The position numbers and the translations under genes are program-made. This document shows positions 6,491 to 37,427 of a stretch of 64,000 nt of DNA, one piece after another. The notes beneath the pieces are model-generated. The model searched no databases and was not told the DNA's origin. It worked only from the letters and a program-made list of their open reading frames with translations. The stretch covers positions 153,414 through 217,413 of IMG/VR virus record IMGVR_UViG_3300023174_000046. One strand, given 5' to 3'. The number at the start of each line of letters is the position of its first letter. Position 1 is the stretch's first letter.

Positions 6491-7303
6491 GTGTTTAAGT
6501 ATATAGTAGGTTTTTCATCGTTTCTCATAGCATCTATTGCCGCATATTTTTCAATAAAAGGCATATCTTTACTGTTCGCAGGTAGTTTTTGGCCTGTTGT
6601 TTTGATGGCCGGTTCTCTTGAAATTGGCAAGCTTGTTGCAACCAGTAGCTTATATCGGTATTACCATGAATTGAATGGTTTTATTAAAACATACCTATTT
6701 ACTGCTATAGCTGTTTTAATGATTATTACTAGCTTGGGCATATTTGGGTTTTTATCCGATGCATTTTATAGAAGTAAAATCAAGTCAGAAACCATGTCAG
6801 CTAAAGTTACTTTTGCTGAAGAAAAGAAAATTACATTGCAGCAGAAATTTGACTACAATAAAGAAAGAGTCAAAACATTATCAAATATTAGAACATCGCA
6901 AGAGGAGAGACTCTCTTCAACAACCAAACAAAATACAAGTACGCAAAAAAGCGGTCTTTTTGGCACAGACCAATCAATAGATGCAAATGCTCTTAAGAGT
7001 AAAACTAAAATTCTCGAAAACGTAAGTGAAGAAATAAAAACTGCAAACTTACAGATTGATGAGCTTAATAAAGAAAACGGTGGCATAATGAATGAGCTAG
7101 AATCACTCAATTCGCAACTATTAGCGCTTAAACAGAATGAAAGCAAGGAATCAGATATTGGCACTTTCAAGTTTATTGCAAAATCATTTAATCTTGAGTT
7201 GGATGTAGCTGTAAAATACTTCATCATATCACTAGTGTTTGTATTTGACCCATTAGCAGTAATCTTGTTGATAGTTTTTAACTCTCTAATAAAAAAAAAG
7301 TAA
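6491..7303 (+). CDS. Membrane protein (3 N-terminal TM, coiled coil, C-terminal TM); ends at a slippery A-AAA-AAG
   Basis: Hydrophobic N-terminus, SLEIGKLVA, FVFDPLAV; late TAAATA at 6481; GTG start. Confidence 0.8.
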   Translation: MFKYIVGFSSFLIASIAAYFSIKGISLLFAGSFWPVVLMAGSLEIGKLVATSSLYRYYHELNGFIKTYLFTAIAVLMIITSLGIFGFLSDAFYRSKIKSETMSAKVTFAEEKKITLQQKFDYNKERVKTLSNIRTSQEERLSSTTKQNTSTQKSGLFGTDQSIDANALKSKTKILENVSEEIKTANLQIDELNKENGGIMNELESLNSQLLALKQNESKESDIGTFKFIAKSFNLELDVAVKYFIISLVFVFDPLAVILLIVFNSLIKKK

Positions 7304-7716
7304 TATTTGACGAAGAAATAATTGTACTGGTGCCTTCACCAACACCGACTGTCACTCCGACGCCCACAGTAACGCCAACTTTAACTGTAACTGCTACGCC
7401 TGCTCCCACTATGACTTCAACCCCTACGGCCACATATACTCCACCACCCACACAAACGCCAACCGCTACCAGTTTTTCTACACCCCTTCAAGTAGATGAA
7501 ATGAAAACTACATCAAATAGCAGACTAGAAGGCACCATATATTGGAGTAAAATGAAATGGGATCTGCCTACATTGACGCCTACACCACAGGCACAAGAAA
7601 GTGAAAAAATAGAACAAAAAGAAATAAATAGTGAAAATTTTATTCGTATAACCGACAACACCCCATCAGTATTTGATAGTAAAAACAAGCTGTCATATTT
7701 TAAAAAGATTGATTAA
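7300..7716 (+). CDS. Pro/Thr-rich ORF, probable -1 frameshift extension of the upstream membrane protein
   Basis: -1 frame is open from the A9 run (7291-7299) to 7716; PTPTVTPTP repeats; no convincing own start. Confidence 0.6.
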   Translation, partial: VIFDEEIIVLVPSPTPTVTPTPTVTPTLTVTATPAPTMTSTPTATYTPPPTQTPTATSFSTPLQVDEMKTTSNSRLEGTIYWSKMKWDLPTLTPTPQAQESEKIEQKEINSENFIRITDNTPSVFDSKNKLSYFKKID

Positions 7717-7724
7717 ATATTATT

Positions 7725-7955
7725 ATGATTGGAAGCGATGCATTTACAAATGGCATTGCCATTTGCGAAGAGTTTTCTCGCCATACATATGGCGACAAAG
7801 AGAATCAATCTATGCTTGTCAATGTTTCACATGATTGGGTTGATAGCTTAATAAACAGAATGTCAAGAATTGGTTTCAAATTAATTACAAAGATAGAGAT
7901 GGACATGACAACCACGGTCGTCTTTAGTTTGGTCAAGCTTAAAAAATCTGCTTGA
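7725..7955 (+). CDS. Hypothetical protein (late)
   Basis: TAAATA at 7714, 5 nt before ATG. Confidence 0.6.
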   Translation: MIGSDAFTNGIAICEEFSRHTYGDKENQSMLVNVSHDWVDSLINRMSRIGFKLITKIEMDMTTTVVFSLVKLKKSA

Positions 7956-7984
7956 ATTATAGAATCTTATATTATCATTAGTAG

Positions 7985-8683
7985 GTGATAGAATTTAATA
8001 AAGCACTTCATGCCTATACAAATGTCCATACAGGCGCAAATTACTTCTCTGTAACAACTGTAATTAATTCTTTTAAAGAGCCTTTTGATGTTGATAAATT
8101 TTCCAAGCTTGTAGCTGCAAAAGAAGGTGTAACACAAGATGAGATCAAGAAGAGATGGAATACTGTAAAAACAACTGCGTGTGACTTTGGCACTGATTCA
8201 CATTCAAAGATTGAAGAGCATATAAAATCTGGTGGTGAAAAATTTAAGGATGATGAAATGGTTATTAAGTTTCTGGAGATATCGGATCTGAATATTGATA
8301 AAGTTAAGAGTGAAACACTTGTACATAATAACGAATACAGAATTGCTGGTACAGCAGATTTTATTGTTGATCAGGGCAAAACGTTTGATGTGTATGATCT
8401 CAAGACCAATAAGAATTTCAGACAATCCTCAAAATATAACAAAACTTTACTGGCGCCTCTGACTCATTTTAGTGATTGTGAATACAATGCATACTCACTT
8501 CAAATTTCTACCTATGCTTATCTCTACAGTACCATGACAGGCAAGAACGTTAATAGCTTACGTTTATTTTGGTATGATAAACAGAAAAACGTGTTTTCTC
8601 GTTACGATACACCTTATCTGTATACTGACGTGAAAAACATGTTAGAAGCATTTAAAGCCAAAGGTTTTACATTAAAGAAATAA
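7985..8683 (+). CDS. PD-(D/E)XK exonuclease
   Basis: SVTT, GT..H..IE, IAGTADF, YDLKT, YSLQISTYAY. Confidence 0.85.
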   Translation: MIEFNKALHAYTNVHTGANYFSVTTVINSFKEPFDVDKFSKLVAAKEGVTQDEIKKRWNTVKTTACDFGTDSHSKIEEHIKSGGEKFKDDEMVIKFLEISDLNIDKVKSETLVHNNEYRIAGTADFIVDQGKTFDVYDLKTNKNFRQSSKYNKTLLAPLTHFSDCEYNAYSLQISTYAYLYSTMTGKNVNSLRLFWYDKQKNVFSRYDTPYLYTDVKNMLEAFKAKGFTLKK

Positions 8684-8887: not shown

Positions 8888-10663
8888 ATGGCAACAGAAG
8901 GCTCAGGTGGATTCGGAAGACAACTATATAAGTTTATTAGCAATAAACTGCCTTATACTTCTTATAATATTCTCGATAAATTTGATGAGTTGAACCCAAA
9001 GTTTAAATTGTTCCACGATCAAGGAACATCCAGGCAGGAAGCTTTGCAAAGACAGAGCATTTCTTCTTCTACAAGTTACGGTGATGATCAAGTTGCGAAT
9101 GTGATGCGCGAATCGCAATTCTATCAATACATGTACGCAAACGTACAAACTGATAAACCTAAGCGCATGATGGATTACAGAATCATGGCAGCATTTTCAG
9201 AAGTTGCAGATGCATTGGATGAGATTTGTGATGAGTGTGTTAATAAGAATGATAAAGGTGAAATTGTTAAACTTACTTTTAATGTTTCAGAAGATTTTGA
9301 AGCAACAGTAAAGGAAAGTCTTTCACGTGAATTTGACCGCTACATCAATTACTTTAACCTTGAAGCTAATGGTTGGGAATATTTTAGAAGAATGCTTGTT
9401 GAAGCTGAGTTATATTTTGAGCATGTTATTCATAAAAGATTTCCACAAGAAGGTGTTCTGGGTGTTGTATCTGTTCCAAGTGAATTAATTGATCCTATCT
9501 TTTCTAATGTACAGAACATGCTTGTAAAGGGCTTCTTGCTTAGAAAGCCAATCATGGATCCACAAAATCCTCTTAAGATTAAAGACTACAAGATGATCCC
9601 GATGGACAAGAATCAGATAACATATATCAATTCTGGTATATGGAACGAAAATAAGACGCTCCGTCTTCCATTCATTGAGAATGCTCGTCGTGCTTATCGT
9701 CAGTTATCTTTGATTGAAGATTCAATCGTAATTTATAGATTAGTTAGAGCACCAGAACGTTTGATCTTTAATGTGGATGTGGGTAACATGTCGCCACCAA
9801 AAGCTGAGGCTTATCTGCGCAAGCTCATGAGCAATTATTGGTCCAAGAGAACATTTGATATTGACCAGAGTGCAACTGTGCAGAAGTTTAACCCACAATC
9901 AATGTTGGATAGCTTCTGGTTTGCCAAGCGTGCTGGCAGCGATGGTACCAATGTTACCTCGTTACCTGGTGGTCAGAATCTCGGTGAGTTGACTGACTTG
10001 ATGTACTTTGTTAAGAAACTCTATAAAGCTCTTAAAGTACCAACTACAAGATTGAATCCAGAAGATCAATACCAAGGTGGTGAAAATATTCTTCGTGAAG
10101 AGTTAAAGTTTGCAAAATTTGTTGTACGGTTGCAACAGAGATTTGCTTTAGGTTTGAAGAACGGTTTTATTACACATCTAAAGCTTAAAGAGTTGTGGGA
10201 CAAGCATAAACTCAAAGAACATCACCTCGATCTCACTTTTAACCCACCATCTAACTTTTATGAACTCAGAGAACAACAGAAACTCGAACTCAAAGCTAAG
10301 ACATTTAATGATTTCTCTCAAAACGATAGTGTCTCAAAGACTTACGCACAAAAGCGTTATCTTGGATGGACTGAGAAAGAAATTATGGCTAACCGTGAAT
10401 TCTTACGTAAAGATAAAGAATTCTCATGGGAACTTGCACAAATTGAAGCAGCAGGTCCAGCATGGCAAAAAGCTATTGCAGCAGGTGGCGAGCCAGCGGC
10501 TGCAGAAGGTGGTGCTGAAGCCGGTGGTGGTGCGCCTCCCGCGTTTGGACCAGGTACTGCAGCTGTCAGTGGCGGGGCAGAAGCAGGCGCGGCTCCTGAG
10601 GCTCCAGCAGCTGGTGCAGAAGCAGGTGCGGCCGCAGCAACTCCTGAAGCACCTGCAGCATAA
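8888..10663 (+). CDS. gp20: Portal vertex protein, T4 gp20-like
   Basis: EDSIVIYRLVRAPERLIFNVDVGNM, LPGGQNLGE, KLYKALKVP, REELKFAKFV. Confidence 0.96.
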   Translation: MATEGSGGFGRQLYKFISNKLPYTSYNILDKFDELNPKFKLFHDQGTSRQEALQRQSISSSTSYGDDQVANVMRESQFYQYMYANVQTDKPKRMMDYRIMAAFSEVADALDEICDECVNKNDKGEIVKLTFNVSEDFEATVKESLSREFDRYINYFNLEANGWEYFRRMLVEAELYFEHVIHKRFPQEGVLGVVSVPSELIDPIFSNVQNMLVKGFLLRKPIMDPQNPLKIKDYKMIPMDKNQITYINSGIWNENKTLRLPFIENARRAYRQLSLIEDSIVIYRLVRAPERLIFNVDVGNMSPPKAEAYLRKLMSNYWSKRTFDIDQSATVQKFNPQSMLDSFWFAKRAGSDGTNVTSLPGGQNLGELTDLMYFVKKLYKALKVPTTRLNPEDQYQGGENILREELKFAKFVVRLQQRFALGLKNGFITHLKLKELWDKHKLKEHHLDLTFNPPSNFYELREQQKLELKAKTFNDFSQNDSVSKTYAQKRYLGWTEKEIMANREFLRKDKEFSWELAQIEAAGPAWQKAIAAGGEPAAAEGGAEAGGGAPPAFGPGTAAVSGGAEAGAAPEAPAAGAEAGAAAATPEAPAA

Positions 10664-17600: not shown

Positions 17601-19304
17601 GGTACCACTTTTGTGAGTGATGGGCGTGCTGCAGTAACTCATGCCATGACATTCCGAGCAGGTATCAATAACTTTACCGGGGGATCAGATCATAATCACG
17701 TGCAATGGCAAGGCGCCCCTTCCAATCCTACCCAAGCATGGCAAATGACCAATGGTGGATCAACAAGTGTTTATGGTTATGGTGCCAATACATATTCACA
17801 AAGATTTCTTGTACATACACTGCCACAATATCAAATCAGTACCACCATTGCAGCTGTTAGCGGTTTCCTTGACACTCAATCAGCTACCCTTGGTGCAGAT
17901 TCAGATACACTGTCAGGAGTTAAACTTATTCTTGATACTACTGCTGGAGTAGGCAATTATGGGTTAATTAATGTGGGAGAGGTGGTTGGGTTTGTAGTTA
18001 ATCCGGGATTGGTAGGCTTGGTTGCTGCAGCTTACGAAACACAATGCACATTAATTTCATCCAATAACACTGGTACATTATCGACATTTCAATTTAATTT
18101 CTTTATTGGTAACGGTGACAACTGGAGCTCTGCAAACAGAGGTATTCAACCAGTTAATTTAAAATCTAGAGCTGAAGGAGGCAATCCAGGCGTAAATCAA
18201 GTTACAAGTCAAATTGGTACCCCCAGCACACAGTACATAGGTCTCACCGGCAGTTACAGAGGCATGAACAAGCATTGCTTAGCCCGCTTCACTACAGGTG
18301 ATATTTTAACTGGCTTCAAGCCAGGCTCTCCTCTCACATTGTGGGTACCTAAGAGCATGCCATCATCTTCTCCAATTGGCTCTGGTTTCATCACATCTGA
18401 TAAAATTTCAACCTTTGCACAAGGCACATTCCCCACTGGTGTGCGCACAGGTTATTTTGATGCTTATGTAGTGAATGTGAGTGGTGGAGACATGGAATTT
18501 GCTTTGTGTAACTTGATGGATTCATATGGATTTGAAAACAGGTCTTGGCCCATATCTGCTGCTGGAAATGCGGGGTGGTTGTTGTACGGTGGCACACAAG
18601 ACACAGTGCATAGACCCACATTTGGTACTGCTGGTTTTTATTTTGAAAGAGAACCTTGGTACTTTTCTGGCCCGGATTATAACTACCTAAGCGGTGGCAT
18701 GGTCAAGTGTGTTGGCTTAGGTAACTCAGAGGTGTATGGTGATTACTCTTATGGCTTGGGTTACCGTGGTGCTGTGTTAGGTAAGAAGTCCGGTACATTT
18801 GCAGGTGATTACAATGCAGTATTTGGTGATAATTCAGTAGCCATCGGTGGCAGTAATTTAATCTCTACAAGTGGCAATCAGGTAGTCATTGGCACGTATA
18901 ACAACCCCAACACCAATTCATTGTTTGTAGTTGGCAGCGGCGCATCAGATAAAAATAGAAAGAATGTATTTGAAGTAAAAGGAAATGGAGACACTACACA
19001 GTCTGGATTTAATATTAGAAGTTTCTCTCTTATTGCTGCTGCTGGTAGCAATCAAGCAACTGCTACAGAAATAACAACAGAAATTGTTACTGTTACCGGA
19101 GGTACCGGTGGTGTTAGATTGCCTGTTACAAATGGAGGTCATTACATAACATTAAATAATAGAAACATAGCTTTCTCACTTTACCCTCCCGTAGGTGGTA
19201 TAATCATAGATCAGAGTATTGGTGTTAATCAACCATATGTTAGCCAGTGGTTCGGTAGCTTGATTATGTATTCGATTAGCGCTAATACCTGGGCACTTTA
19301 CTAA
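14607..19304 (+). CDS. Long tail fibre/adhesin with YadA-head-like repeats
   Basis: SHAQG/SHAEG repeats, GKVGIGT motif, LFVVGSG...RKNVFEV; late TAAATA at 14595. Confidence 0.8.
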   Translation: MPTYKKFTDFSLVTAPADADFIVGYKADASAEQRTTVNDLLSTSLASKGVFLQGDLSVAIGGDGNTVNSQCMAIGDANVAQGLNSLAQGYSNVTALLYSTAMGYNNKATGDVAFAQGDSNQATGEASFAQGTLNIAEGTDSQAQGFRNIASGPYSHAQGYNNCTGGYVTGNISYGAAHAQGGYNVVAIPLAHAQGFANKIGYYEYADWYATNPPRLGFGYSDRTLSGLNVYGLNNPALSSSVRLFFIGDNGINTYSACVSCTQANYYDPFSQTTGFTIFLKNDASAVLPADDYYSPSIICVPITAYDGSTSFSNFGVAAYAQGLQNVVAGNYAYAQGISNTAQGYASHAAGYASSTGPNAVYAFAHGYNCIAYGRYSHAIGIKAYAQHDNSYVWNSDPNPTGNYFTSSLSAQYSVNAPGGIVLSGGNTSVQGLVVKNGNNIVAELTDGTKNWIYGGLSASTLFGYGNSAGFFYRGIGLATGNVAVSINGVANYANSGITDINGAYNFVYSDLGRVSGISNVLGMESGSVEGALNTVGSPFTISRIVSASNTIFVHSTFINNNTNSFYFRPNQVIQIDGIVGNTYNNSAASRVNTRFTVVSSDTTARSITVVESVTAMQDYRDNQPFTDQRYVVAVQGRNTSNTLNVAGAHAEGMGNTVFSRAGHVEGEANVVTGSDGHAENFGNFAATGAHAEGNENRAGFGVLYFDSYNASTKTFQLFTNFLSAHNTIDLPLTPNSTLYFINVAAGASNKRKFTRFLVLSSDPALNTVTALSAVYPDDIPSSGVSTLTRAKQLLQSLNSYTHAEGSFNNAKGPSSHAEGAFTIAQGSYSHAAGVNATAKQDYTYAWSSNDGAGPQSNRKNTETTRTGQYMVSAHGGIFFPGKVGIGTDSIENALTVAGTISATTITADSISYNGAGFNTLPTYKTYQVNLAAKNSAWPVISAAQLAETGYYDSGAAYAMPGGLVIKGHSPAYNTSIQNLPGYGTYGMWLQGVDQMDPGTTFVSDGRAAVTHAMTFRAGINNFTGGSDHNHVQWQGAPSNPTQAWQMTNGGSTSVYGYGANTYSQRFLVHTLPQYQISTTIAAVSGFLDTQSATLGADSDTLSGVKLILDTTAGVGNYGLINVGEVVGFVVNPGLVGLVAAAYETQCTLISSNNTGTLSTFQFNFFIGNGDNWSSANRGIQPVNLKSRAEGGNPGVNQVTSQIGTPSTQYIGLTGSYRGMNKHCLARFTTGDILTGFKPGSPLTLWVPKSMPSSSPIGSGFITSDKISTFAQGTFPTGVRTGYFDAYVVNVSGGDMEFALCNLMDSYGFENRSWPISAAGNAGWLLYGGTQDTVHRPTFGTAGFYFEREPWYFSGPDYNYLSGGMVKCVGLGNSEVYGDYSYGLGYRGAVLGKKSGTFAGDYNAVFGDNSVAIGGSNLISTSGNQVVIGTYNNPNTNSLFVVGSGASDKNRKNVFEVKGNGDTTQSGFNIRSFSLIAAAGSNQATATEITTEIVTVTGGTGGVRLPVTNGGHYITLNNRNIAFSLYPPVGGIIIDQSIGVNQPYVSQWFGSLIMYSISANTWALY

Positions 19305-22430: not shown

Positions 22431-22522
22431 GCGCGGGTGGTGAAACGGCGAAACACATCTGGCTTAAGATCAGATACGGATTAATGATCACACTGTGGGT
22501 TCAAATCCCACCCCGCGTACCA
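22431..22522 (+). tRNA. tRNA-Leu(UAA)
   Basis: GCGCGGG/CCCGCGT acceptor, TCTGG-CTTAAGA-TCAGA anticodon arm, long variable arm, TTCAAAT T-loop, ACCA. Confidence 0.93.
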
Positions 22523-37173: not shown

Positions 37174-37268
37174 GCCTCCGTCGTCTAGCGGTCAAGACAC
37201 ACGGCTTATACCCGTGCTCGGCACCAGATTAGTGCATAACGTTGGTTCGAATCCAACCGGAGGTACCA
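37174..37268 (+). tRNA. tRNA-Ile(UAU) with a 24-nt variable region
   Basis: GCCTCCG/CGGAGGT acceptor, CACGG-CTTATAC-CCGTG, GTTGG-TTCGAAT-CCAAC, ACCA. Confidence 0.85.
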
Positions 37269-37273
37269 TTTTT

Positions 37274-37349
37274 GGGCGTATAGCTCAGCGGTTAGAGCAG
37301 GGCACTCATAATGCCTTGGTCCTAGGTTCAAATCCTAGTACGCCCACCA
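37274..37349 (+). tRNA. tRNA-Ile2(CAU), lysidine type (Met less likely)
   Basis: GGGCA-CTCATAA-TGCCT-TGGTC resembles ileX-type tRNAs; CCA encoded. Confidence 0.82.
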
Positions 37350-37351
37350 TT

Positions 37352-37425
37352 GCATCTGTAGCTCAGTTGGACAGAGCAACGGATTTCTAATCCGTGGGTC
37401 ACAGGTTCGATCCCTGTCAGATGCA
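37352..37425 (+). tRNA. tRNA-Arg(UCU), CCA not encoded
   Basis: GCATCTG/CAGATGC acceptor, ACGGA-TTTCTAA-TCCGT. Confidence 0.92.
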
Positions 37426-37427
37426 AG

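What the first reader, a model, noticed from the sequence alone, without database searches (positions are those of the whole stretch)
7289..7345. Candidate programmed -1 frameshift (A AAA AAG then stop) adding a Pro/Thr tail to a membrane protein
Seen: ATA AAA AAA AAG TAA ends 6491..7303. The -1 frame continues V-I-F-D-E-E-I-I-V-L-V-P-S-P-T-P to 7716 without a stop, and the downstream ORF lacks its own promoter or SD. Established: A-AAA-AAG is the most efficient bacterial -1 slippery heptamer (dnaX, IS elements), and A9 also permits transcriptional slippage. Inference: short and long isoforms. No strong stimulator is seen; a TGGTG/CACCA hairpin lies ~27 nt downstream.
Basis: partly seen in the sequence, partly recalled or inferred. 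Interest (0 to 1): 0.6.

Follow-up and report, generated by a model that had tools for sequence, protein, structure and literature searches.

The report
Conserved poly-A frameshift in phage gene
A run of nine A's at the end of a phage membrane-protein gene is kept in every close relative, so that a fraction of the protein probably gains a 138-residue tail written in the next reading frame; this is a new natural example of a known recoding trick, most likely slippage of RNA polymerase.

Summary
ORF 6491..7303 ends ATA AAA AAA AAG TAA, with A9 at 7291-7299. The -1 frame is open from 7282 to 7716.

This is not chance or a sequencing error.
- Sixteen diverged lineages of the same uncultured T4-like phage clade (57-100% aa identity) keep a run of 9-10 A's at this spot.
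- In 14 lineages a 111-160-codon tail ORF is open through the run in the -1 frame. A 15th, L115, is cut after about 60 nt but fits -1. L103 carries its tail in +1.
- These tail ORFs mostly contain no start codon at all.
- The tail is a Pro/Thr linker plus a conserved C-terminal motif under purifying selection (dN/dS about 0.1).
- All more distant relatives carry a 42-110-aa tail in frame and have no run of 9 or more A's.

So the gene makes a short form (270 aa) and, by recoding inside the run, a long form (408 aa).

I favour RNA polymerase slippage over a classical -1 ribosomal frameshift.
- What is conserved is the run length of at least 9, including a synonymous A in a codon outside the heptamer.
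- No stimulator exists.
- One lineage has its tail in +1.

The frequent G after the run keeps ribosomal frameshifting possible. Reads could not be checked.

This is a new member of a known kind. The protein's function is unknown.

The parts
6491..7303 (+). Zero-frame ORF giving the short isoform (270 aa). It has three N-terminal TM helices, a long helical hairpin (about residues 63-220) and a fourth TM helix, and ends ...NSLIKKK*.
   Evidence: The family has 4930 relatives. No Pfam or PHROG family matches.
7291..7299 (+). A9 run, the proposed slippage site. It spans the last base of ATA plus AAA AAA AA of KKK.
   Evidence: It is the only A9/T9 in the window. A run of 9-10 A's is kept in 16 lineages, while neighbouring synonymous sites are saturated.
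7294..7300 (+). A_AAA_AAG heptamer in the correct phase for a -1 ribosomal shift (the alternative or contributing mechanism).
   Evidence: K3 is AAG in 12 of 16 lineages and AAA in 4.
7301..7303 (+). Zero-frame stop TAA. In relatives it lies 0-8 codons after the run.
7300..7716 (+). Tail coding region in the -1 frame (138 codons plus TAA at 7714-7716). The frame is open from 7282. Joined to ORF1 it gives a 408-aa long isoform.
   Evidence: Homologous tails lie in the same frame in 14 other lineages.
7333..7490 (+). Pro/Thr-rich linker of the tail (approximate limits). Its length varies between lineages.
   Evidence: AF2 predicts it extended with no secondary structure.
7530..7713 (+). Conserved C-terminal module of the tail (GTIYWSKMKWDLP ... 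NFIRITDNTPS ... KLSYFKKID).
   Evidence: Alignment A3. dN/dS is 0.07-0.11 over the last 29 codons. Low-confidence short beta strands are predicted.

Best explanation
The gene at 6491..7716 is one gene written in two frames. Standard decoding stops at TAA 7301 and gives a 270-aa four-TM membrane protein. In a fraction of expression events the frame changes inside the A9 run (7291-7299). The protein then continues in the -1 frame with a Pro/Thr linker and a conserved C-terminal motif, giving 408 aa.

The most likely mechanism is slippage of the host RNA polymerase on the nine A's. This makes some mRNAs with ten A's (also 7 or 13), which ordinary translation reads into the tail. mRNAs with 8, 9, 11 or 12 A's give short forms. 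A -1 ribosomal shift on A_AAA_AAG gives the same product and may contribute.

Shown: the sequence, the conserved split, and selection on both the run and the tail.
Inferred: that the long form is made, its share, the mechanism, and that the out-of-frame state is kept to set a ratio of tailed to tail-less subunits.
Also inferred, from the positive-inside rule only: a topology with N-terminus in, hairpin in the periplasm, and tail in the cytoplasm.
For: 1. Sixteen lineages at 57-100% aa identity all have A9(+G) or A10(+T) at the KKK that follows TM4, with a zero-frame stop 0-8 codons later. In 14 of them a homologous 111-160-codon tail is open through the run in the -1 frame. L115 is cut after about 60 nt but fits -1; L103 has its tail in +1.
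2. Five tail ORFs (L017, L019, L102, L111/112, L113) contain no ATG, GTG or TTG at all. Gene callers leave this gap uncalled.
3. The tail is coding. It has a conserved C-terminal motif, dN/dS of 0.07-0.11, and an excess of third-position changes.
4. All more distant relatives (37-46% identity, and cultured phages) carry a 42-110-aa tail in frame after TM4 and have no run of 9 or more A's.
5. The recoded clade is monophyletic (SH-aLRT 99) and about one substitution per site deep. A second clade (L013-16) has its own A10 run 15 residues further on, with a -1 (TP)n tail.
6. For RNA polymerase slippage specifically:
- The codon before KKK changes its amino acid (I/L/V) but ends in A in 15 of 16 lineages. 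The exception, L099, shifts the phase and still has A9. The genome-wide share of A-ending Leu/Ile/Val codons is 0.32-0.44.
- Five variants (four clade-1 lineages and clade 2) carry the poorer heptamer A_AAA_AAA.
- There is no downstream structure in 10 lineages (z from -1.4 to +1.9) and no SD-like motif upstream in 16.
- L103 has its tail in +1.
7. Published precedent: nine A's or T's slip efficiently in bacteria, and Thermus dnaX uses such a run (PMC5009743, PMC1088944). A poly-A tract in tssM gives two length variants of an inner-membrane protein at about 20%, and both are needed (PMC4256274).
Against: - There is no direct evidence that the long form or slipped mRNAs exist.
- The base after the run is G in 12 of 16 lineages, against an AAG share of 0.33 in the genome. 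That is what selection for the efficient ribosomal site A_AAA_AAG would give. It could equally cap the run at nine.
- The lineages share descent, so the counts are not fully independent.
- L103 may be a one-base homopolymer miscall.
- The host, and hence its polymerase and its set of Lys tRNAs, is unknown.
- The tails of the recoded clade show no profile similarity to the in-frame tails of the sister clade, so continuity of the tail rests on architecture only.
Confidence: 0.8

Rival explanations
1. Classical -1 programmed ribosomal frameshifting on A_AAA_AAG (E. coli dnaX type) is the main route to the long isoform, and the mRNA is uniform.
For: - The heptamer is in the right phase in the window and in 11 other lineages.
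- G follows the run in 12 of 16 lineages against 0.33 expected.
- The tail is in -1 in 14 of 15 complete lineages.
- A_AAA_AAG is the most shift-prone bacterial heptamer (PMC5009743).
Against: - There is no 3' structure and no 5' SD-like stimulator in any lineage.
- Selection extends to bases outside the heptamer.
- Five variants (four clade-1 lineages and clade 2) use A_AAA_AAA, which is much less shift-prone in E. coli.
- The tail of L103 is in +1.
- Efficiency depends on the host having a single tRNA-Lys, which is unknown. The phage brings none.
Confidence: 0.3
2. These are two separate genes. The tail ORF is translated on its own by coupling, re-initiation or a non-canonical start, and the A-run is incidental.
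For: - In the window a GTG lies at 7330.
- Overlapping or abutting genes are common in phages.
- A distant relative, L030, has an ATGA overlap with a downstream gene.
Against: - Five lineages have no ATG, GTG or TTG anywhere in the tail ORF, and others have one only deep inside it.
- There is no SD-like motif and no promoter-like signal above chance.
- The distance from the zero-frame stop to any landmark in the tail varies.
- The run is conserved at synonymous sites.
- Relatives carry the tail in frame.
Confidence: 0.04
3. This is an artefact or decay: a homopolymer miscall in the assembly, or a recent frameshift mutation leaving a dead tail.
For: A9 runs are error-prone and mutable. One locus (L103) differs in frame.
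Against: - The same split occurs in 16 lineages from JGI, ENA and Logan assemblies.
- A9G and A10T have the same total length.
- 43 of 44 cluster members keep the same C-terminus.
- The tail is under purifying selection across about one substitution per site of divergence.
Confidence: 0.03
4. DNA-level phase variation: replication slippage in the run produces subpopulations of phage genomes with the tail in frame, rather than RNA or ribosome slippage.
For: Runs of nine A's are hypermutable at replication (PMC1088944). L103 could be such a variant.
Against: - No in-frame variant appears among 21 close clusters or 44 cluster members.
- Consensus assemblies always show the out-of-frame state.
- An in-frame genotype would be easy to fix if it were favoured.
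Confidence: 0.05

Closest known systems
Citrobacter rodentium / Yersinia tssM transcriptional frameshifting (Gueguen et al. 2014, PMC4256274)
   Same: - A poly-A tract lies just before a premature stop in an inner-membrane protein gene.
- Slippage yields a truncated form and a full-length form that differ by a C-terminal part.
- No stimulatory RNA elements are involved.
- Both forms and their ratio matter, and the shift is about 20%.
   Different: - That tract is 11 A's in a bacterial T6SS gene and the frame change is +1. Here it is 9-10 A's, a -1 frame, a phage gene of unknown function, and no homology.
- Here the state is conserved over a deep clade rather than a few strains.
Thermus thermophilus dnaX (run of nine A's, RNA polymerase slippage) versus E. 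coli dnaX (A_AAA_AAG -1 frameshift) (PMC5009743, PMC1088944)
   Same: - The sequence here satisfies both sites at once: nine A's, and A_AAA_AAG in phase.
- Two products share an N-terminal part and arise at a set ratio.
   Different: - In dnaX the shifted product is the shorter one. Here it is the longer one, as in Shigella mxiE.
- E. coli dnaX has an SD-like element and a stem-loop as stimulators, which are absent here.
Conserved -1 frameshift in tail assembly chaperone genes of dsDNA phages (lambda G/GT type; from my own knowledge, not checked here)
   Same: A phage gene pair is expressed as a short form and a C-terminally extended form by a frame change, and this is conserved across diverged phages.
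   Different: - It uses a different gene, heptamers such as G_GGA_AAG, and a low, fixed ratio in a tail-assembly role.
- The gene here is a membrane protein upstream of the portal gene, not in the tail module, and the conserved element is a homopolymer run.
Ribosome sliding on poly(A) (Koutmou et al. 2015, PMC4363877)
   Same: Iterated AAA lysine codons let ribosomes lose frame without any stimulator.
   Different: In that study sliding was robust at A11, and little was seen with A9 or A10. Here the runs are 9-10.

Membership tests
Programmed transcriptional slippage site (Thermus dnaX / mxiE / tssM type) | Homopolymer run of about 9 or more A or T in the coding strand | tested here: met
   A9 at 7291-7299. 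The run is 9-10 A's in 16 clade-1 lineages and in clade 2.
Programmed transcriptional slippage site (Thermus dnaX / mxiE / tssM type) | Run length conserved at synonymous or otherwise free positions among diverged homologs, in a genome that otherwise avoids such runs | tested here: met
   The codon before KKK ends in A in 15 of 16 lineages although its amino acid varies, and L099 compensates. The genome has only 3 A9 runs and no AAA AAA AAA triplet among 22 KKK.
Programmed transcriptional slippage site (Thermus dnaX / mxiE / tssM type) | A second frame, open across the run, that encodes a conserved protein part without its own start | tested here: met
Programmed transcriptional slippage site (Thermus dnaX / mxiE / tssM type) | mRNA population heterogeneous in run length while the DNA is uniform | not testable with these tools
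-1 programmed ribosomal frameshift (E. coli dnaX / IS3 type) | X_XXY_YYZ heptamer in zero-frame phase, with a -1 ORF overlapping it | tested here: met
   The heptamer is A_AAA_AAG in 12 lineages and A_AAA_AAA in 4. The tail is in -1 in 14 lineages (L115, cut, fits -1) and in +1 in L103.
-1 programmed ribosomal frameshift (E. coli dnaX / IS3 type) | 3' stimulatory stem-loop or pseudoknot 5-9 nt after the site | tested here: not met
   The 80 nt after the run were folded in 10 lineages: MFE -1.3 to -7.9 kcal/mol, z from -1.4 to +1.9. The window's 5-bp hairpin starts 28 nt downstream and is absent in L002.
-1 programmed ribosomal frameshift (E. coli dnaX / IS3 type) | 5' SD-like stimulator about 10 nt upstream | tested here: not met
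   No GGAG, GAGG, AGGA or similar motif occurs within 30 nt upstream in 16 lineages.
-1 programmed ribosomal frameshift (E. coli dnaX / IS3 type) | Host decodes AAA and AAG with a single tRNA-Lys (needed for high shiftiness of AAG) | not testable with these tools
   The host is unknown. The phage encodes 16 tRNAs, none for Lys.
Independent downstream gene | Start codon with a ribosome-binding site at the head of the ORF | tested here: not met
   Five lineages have no start-like codon in the whole tail ORF, and the gap is uncalled by gene callers.
Named protein family for the membrane protein (Pfam, PHROGs, solved structures) | Significant profile or fold match | tested here: not met
   The best Pfam E-value is 0.064, and PHROG matches are weak and all to families of unknown function. 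The Atlas returns only viral hypothetical clusters. The best Foldseek PDB hit has E 0.08 on a model with pLDDT 68.5.

The most novel reading that the evidence does not exclude
The A-run is a tuned RNA polymerase slippage 'rheostat' that arose twice in one phage membrane-protein family (clade 1 right after TM4, clade 2 fifteen residues later). It sets the ratio of tailed to tail-less subunits in a hetero-oligomeric envelope complex. Lineage L103 shows that the tail can move to the other alternative frame and be served by the deletion-type or +2 slippage product. That would make this the first conserved, clade-wide use of transcriptional slippage in a tailed phage's own gene.
Probability: 0.25. 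Interest if true: 0.7.

Novelty: new member of a known kind. Interest (0 to 1): 0.55.

Why it matters
- **Annotation.** This gene is annotated as a 270-aa protein followed by a roughly 400-nt "empty" gap in every assembly seen. The gap is coding, and pipelines miss the long isoform.
- **A test case for mechanism.** A deep, natural series of variants (A9G, A10T, a phase-shifted A9, and one +1 arrangement) lets RNA polymerase slippage be separated from ribosomal frameshifting, in a group of abundant freshwater T4-like phages.
- **A handle on function.** The family is large (about 4,900 relatives, including phages of Pelagibacter, Microcystis, Xanthomonas, Ralstonia and Flavobacterium) and has no known role. 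The two-isoform design suggests that the C-terminal tail is needed only on some subunits.

Tried and rejected
- **Nucleotide similarity to deposited phages.** None found.
- **Pfam, PHROGs, Atlas and Foldseek for the membrane protein.** No usable match. The AF2 models are of low confidence (pLDDT 68.5 and 57.3).
- **Profile comparison of the recoded tails with the in-frame tails of the sister clade.** No similarity (hhalign probability 0.1%). My first impression that KKKVIFDEEIIV matches NKKFDEKEIEII is not supported statistically.
- **Search with the tail alone.** It found only partial ORF calls in close relatives.
Rejected.
- **The other two A9 runs of the genome as further slippage sites.** Neither has a second ORF.
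- **Own promoter for the tail.** Promoter-like hits are at chance level and there is no TATAAATA nearby.
- **Careful tree search.** It did not finish, so the quick IQ-TREE tree was used. All 125 distinct rows were kept. Long-branch rows (cultured phages, L164, L052) are placed uncertainly, so one versus two origins of the recoded state is not settled.
- **Large representative-protein search and complex prediction.** Not used, because no claim here rests on them.

Full report
**Setting.** The window is the last 64 kb of a 217,413-bp virus record (G000:C1:153414-217413, CheckV 100%). This is metagenome contig Ga0214921_10000052. GC content is 35.7%. A T4-type portal gene lies at 8888..10663 (Pfam Portal_T4, 4e-100). 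Its best match to cultured phages is about 35% identity, to cyanomyovirus portals. The genome is therefore an uncultured, distant T4-like myovirus. No deposited phage matches at the nucleotide level.

**The observation.** It is exact.
- ORF 6491..7303 (GTG start, 270 aa) ends ...CTA ATA AAA AAA AAG TAA. The A9 run is at 7291-7299.
- The -1 frame is open from 7282 to 7716 and reads KKK VIFDEEIIVLVPSPTPTV...
- The first start-like codon in that frame is GTG at 7330, with no SD-like motif before it. The first ATG is at 7411.
- The run is the only A9 or T9 in the window, against 5.8 +/- 3.3 in shuffles.
- It is one of three A9 runs in the whole genome, which has no T9 and nothing longer.
- In long ORFs of this genome, none of 22 Lys-Lys-Lys triplets is AAA AAA AAA, although AAA makes up two thirds of Lys codons. 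Long A-runs are therefore avoided here, which makes this one stand out.
- The bare heptamer AAAAAAG is frequent (50 copies) and is not evidence by itself.

**The protein.**
- ORF1 belongs to a large family: 4930 hits with E at or below 1e-3. No Pfam or PHROG annotation applies.
- Homologs annotated as "hypothetical protein" occur in phages of Pelagibacter (Mosig), Microcystis, Xanthomonas, Stenotrophomonas, Ralstonia, Flavobacterium and Salicola, and in huge uncultured phages.
- An AlphaFold model built on 52 sequences has low confidence (pLDDT 68.5). It gives two N-terminal TM helices, then a third that runs on into a long helix (63-146). A conserved tip follows (around G155-L-F157), then a return helix (165-220), a short helix, and a fourth TM helix (237-269).
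- Foldseek against the PDB gives nothing usable; the best E-value is 0.08.
- Charge counts over the family alignment are as follows. The TM2-TM3 loop has 3.4 K+R against 0.65 D+E. The stretch after TM4 has 3.1 against 1.6. The two bases of the hairpin are balanced. By the positive-inside rule this suggests an N-in topology, with the hairpin in the periplasm and the C-terminal tail in the cytoplasm. This is inference only.

**Comparative test of the split.** I gathered DNA for relatives from IMG/VR, from JGI metagenomes and by exact look-up of eight proteins.
- Sixteen distinct lineages share 57-100% aa identity with ORF1. They form one well-supported clade (SH-aLRT 99, about one substitution per site between the deepest tips; quick IQ-TREE).
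- Every one has a run of nine A's followed by G (12 lineages plus the phase-shifted L099) or ten A's followed by T (L017, L113, L104). The run sits at the KKK that follows TM4. A zero-frame stop lies 0 to 8 codons later.
- In 14 of the 15 lineages whose contig continues, a 111-160-codon ORF is open through the run in the -1 frame. L115 is cut after about 60 nt but is consistent with this.
- These tail ORFs encode a Pro/Thr-rich linker of variable length and a conserved end: (E/D)G..(E/Y)WS...W.LP ... nF(I/L)KI(I/V)DNTP ... L(S/Y)(Y/F)(F/Y).KK...
- Over the last 29 codons, dN/dS is 0.07-0.11 for pairs whose synonymous sites are not yet saturated. Third-position differences dominate (419 against 253 and 226).
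- Five lineages have no ATG, GTG or TTG anywhere in the tail ORF. The gene callers behind the public assemblies leave a gap of about 400 nt here.
- All relatives outside this clade (37-46% identity, more than 100 loci) and the cultured phages continue in frame after TM4 for 42-110 residues and have no run of 9 or more A's. No in-frame form occurs among the 21 closest protein clusters.
- Of 44 distinct member proteins from four of those clusters, drawn from dozens of contigs, 43 keep the same C-terminus.

Sequencing error, recent decay and "two independent genes" are therefore all very unlikely. The tail can only be made as an extension of ORF1 by a frame change inside the run.

**A second clade.** Loci L013-L016 (361-aa ORF1, two lineages) lie elsewhere in the tree. 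They have an A10 run fifteen residues after TM4 (...ELPKKKTG*), followed in the -1 frame by a start-less tail with a (TP)n linker. The tree needs at least two changes of state. However, the well-supported branches alone do not exclude a single origin.

**Which mechanism.** RNA polymerase slippage and a -1 ribosomal shift give the same protein (...IKKK-VIFDEE..., 408 aa). Transcripts with 10, 7 or 13 A's read into the tail. Those with 8 or 11 A's end ...KKSNI or ...KKKSNI.

Four observations favour RNA polymerase slippage.
1. What is conserved is a run of at least nine A's, not just the heptamer.
   - The codon before KKK encodes Ile, Leu or Val in different lineages, yet ends in A in 15 of 16. 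The one exception (L099, ATT) has AAA AAA AAA G, so it is again A9 but in another phase.
   - Neighbouring conserved Leu codons use five or six synonyms. A-ending codons make up only 0.32-0.44 of Leu, Ile and Val codons genome-wide.
   - Nine is the length at which bacterial RNA polymerase slips efficiently, and the length at which many genomes show avoidance (PMC5009743; PMC1088944).
2. Five variants (L017, L099, L104, L113 and clade 2) carry A_AAA_AAA, which is far less shift-prone for ribosomes than A_AAA_AAG in E. coli.
3. No stimulator exists.
   - The 80 nt downstream fold no better than shuffles in ten lineages.
   - No SD-like motif lies within 30 nt upstream in sixteen lineages.
4. 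In L103 the run and stop are as in the window, but the homologous tail lies in the +1 frame. That frame opens only inside the run. A -1 ribosomal shift cannot serve it, whereas a transcript with one A fewer or two more can. This locus is a single contig and may be a homopolymer miscall of an A10G state, so I give it little weight.

One observation favours a ribosomal contribution. G follows the run in 12 of 16 lineages although AAG is only a third of Lys codons. Selection to cap the run at nine would explain this equally well.

Ribosome sliding on poly(A) is a further possibility, but it was weak at A9-A10 in the one study I read (PMC4363877).

My split is about 0.5 for RNA polymerase slippage as the main route, about 0.3 for ribosomal frameshifting as the main route, and the rest mixed or other.

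**Why keep the split.** An in-frame allele is one base away, and the run is mutable. Yet the out-of-frame state has persisted through the whole clade. I infer selection for a mixture of tail-less and tailed subunits. This was shown experimentally for TssM, where about 20% frameshifting on a poly-A tract gives two forms that are both required (PMC4256274). The tail model is an extended linker with short, low-confidence beta strands at the conserved motifs (pLDDT 57). That would fit a tether ending in a docking motif.

The protein's function remains unknown. The only lead is that the Mosig homolog directly follows a putative glucosaminidase gene.

**Limits.**
- No reads, no RNA data, no host, and no experiment.
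- The lineages are related, so the counts overstate independence.
- The tree is the quick version.
- Topology and function are inferences.
I used no alternative genetic code.

Noticed in passing
L103:3813-4243: In one clade member the run and stop are identical to the window's (A9 G TAA), but the homologous tail is in the +1 frame, which opens only inside the run. It is either a real lineage using the other slippage product or a one-base homopolymer miscall.
   Followed up: partly
L013-L016 (e.g. L015:1650-2303): A second, distant clade of the same family (361-aa ORF1) has its own A10 run 15 residues after TM4, with a start-less -1 tail carrying a long (TP)n/(ETPTP)n linker. L013 loses frame inside the repeat relative to its twin L014, probably through repeat mis-assembly.
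   Followed up: partly
genome coordinates 18866-18874 and 91531-91539 (outside the window): These are the only other A9 runs of the 217-kb genome. One lies at the very end of a 146-codon ORF and one near the head of a 114-codon ORF. Neither has a long second frame open across it.
   Followed up: yes
window about 22431-22522 and 37174-37426; the rest of the genome at 25-32 kb: The phage encodes 16 tRNAs, including Thr(UGU) and Pro(UGG), which suit the Pro/Thr linker codons. It encodes none for Lys.
   Followed up: no
window 10400-10660: The T4-type portal protein ends in an Ala/Gly/Pro/Glu-rich low-complexity stretch of about 80 residues that lies beyond the Pfam portal domain.
   Followed up: no
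L186:825-2457 (Pelagibacter phage Mosig): The cultured-phage homolog Mosig_00157 (single ORF, 326 aa) directly follows a 'putative glucosaminidase' gene. This is a weak hint of an envelope or lysis role for the family.
   Followed up: no
window 7725-8683: A conserved 76-aa ORF and a PD-(D/E)XK exonuclease homolog (PHROG 298, 1e-25) follow the tail and precede the portal gene. The order is syntenic in all clade members.
   Followed up: no
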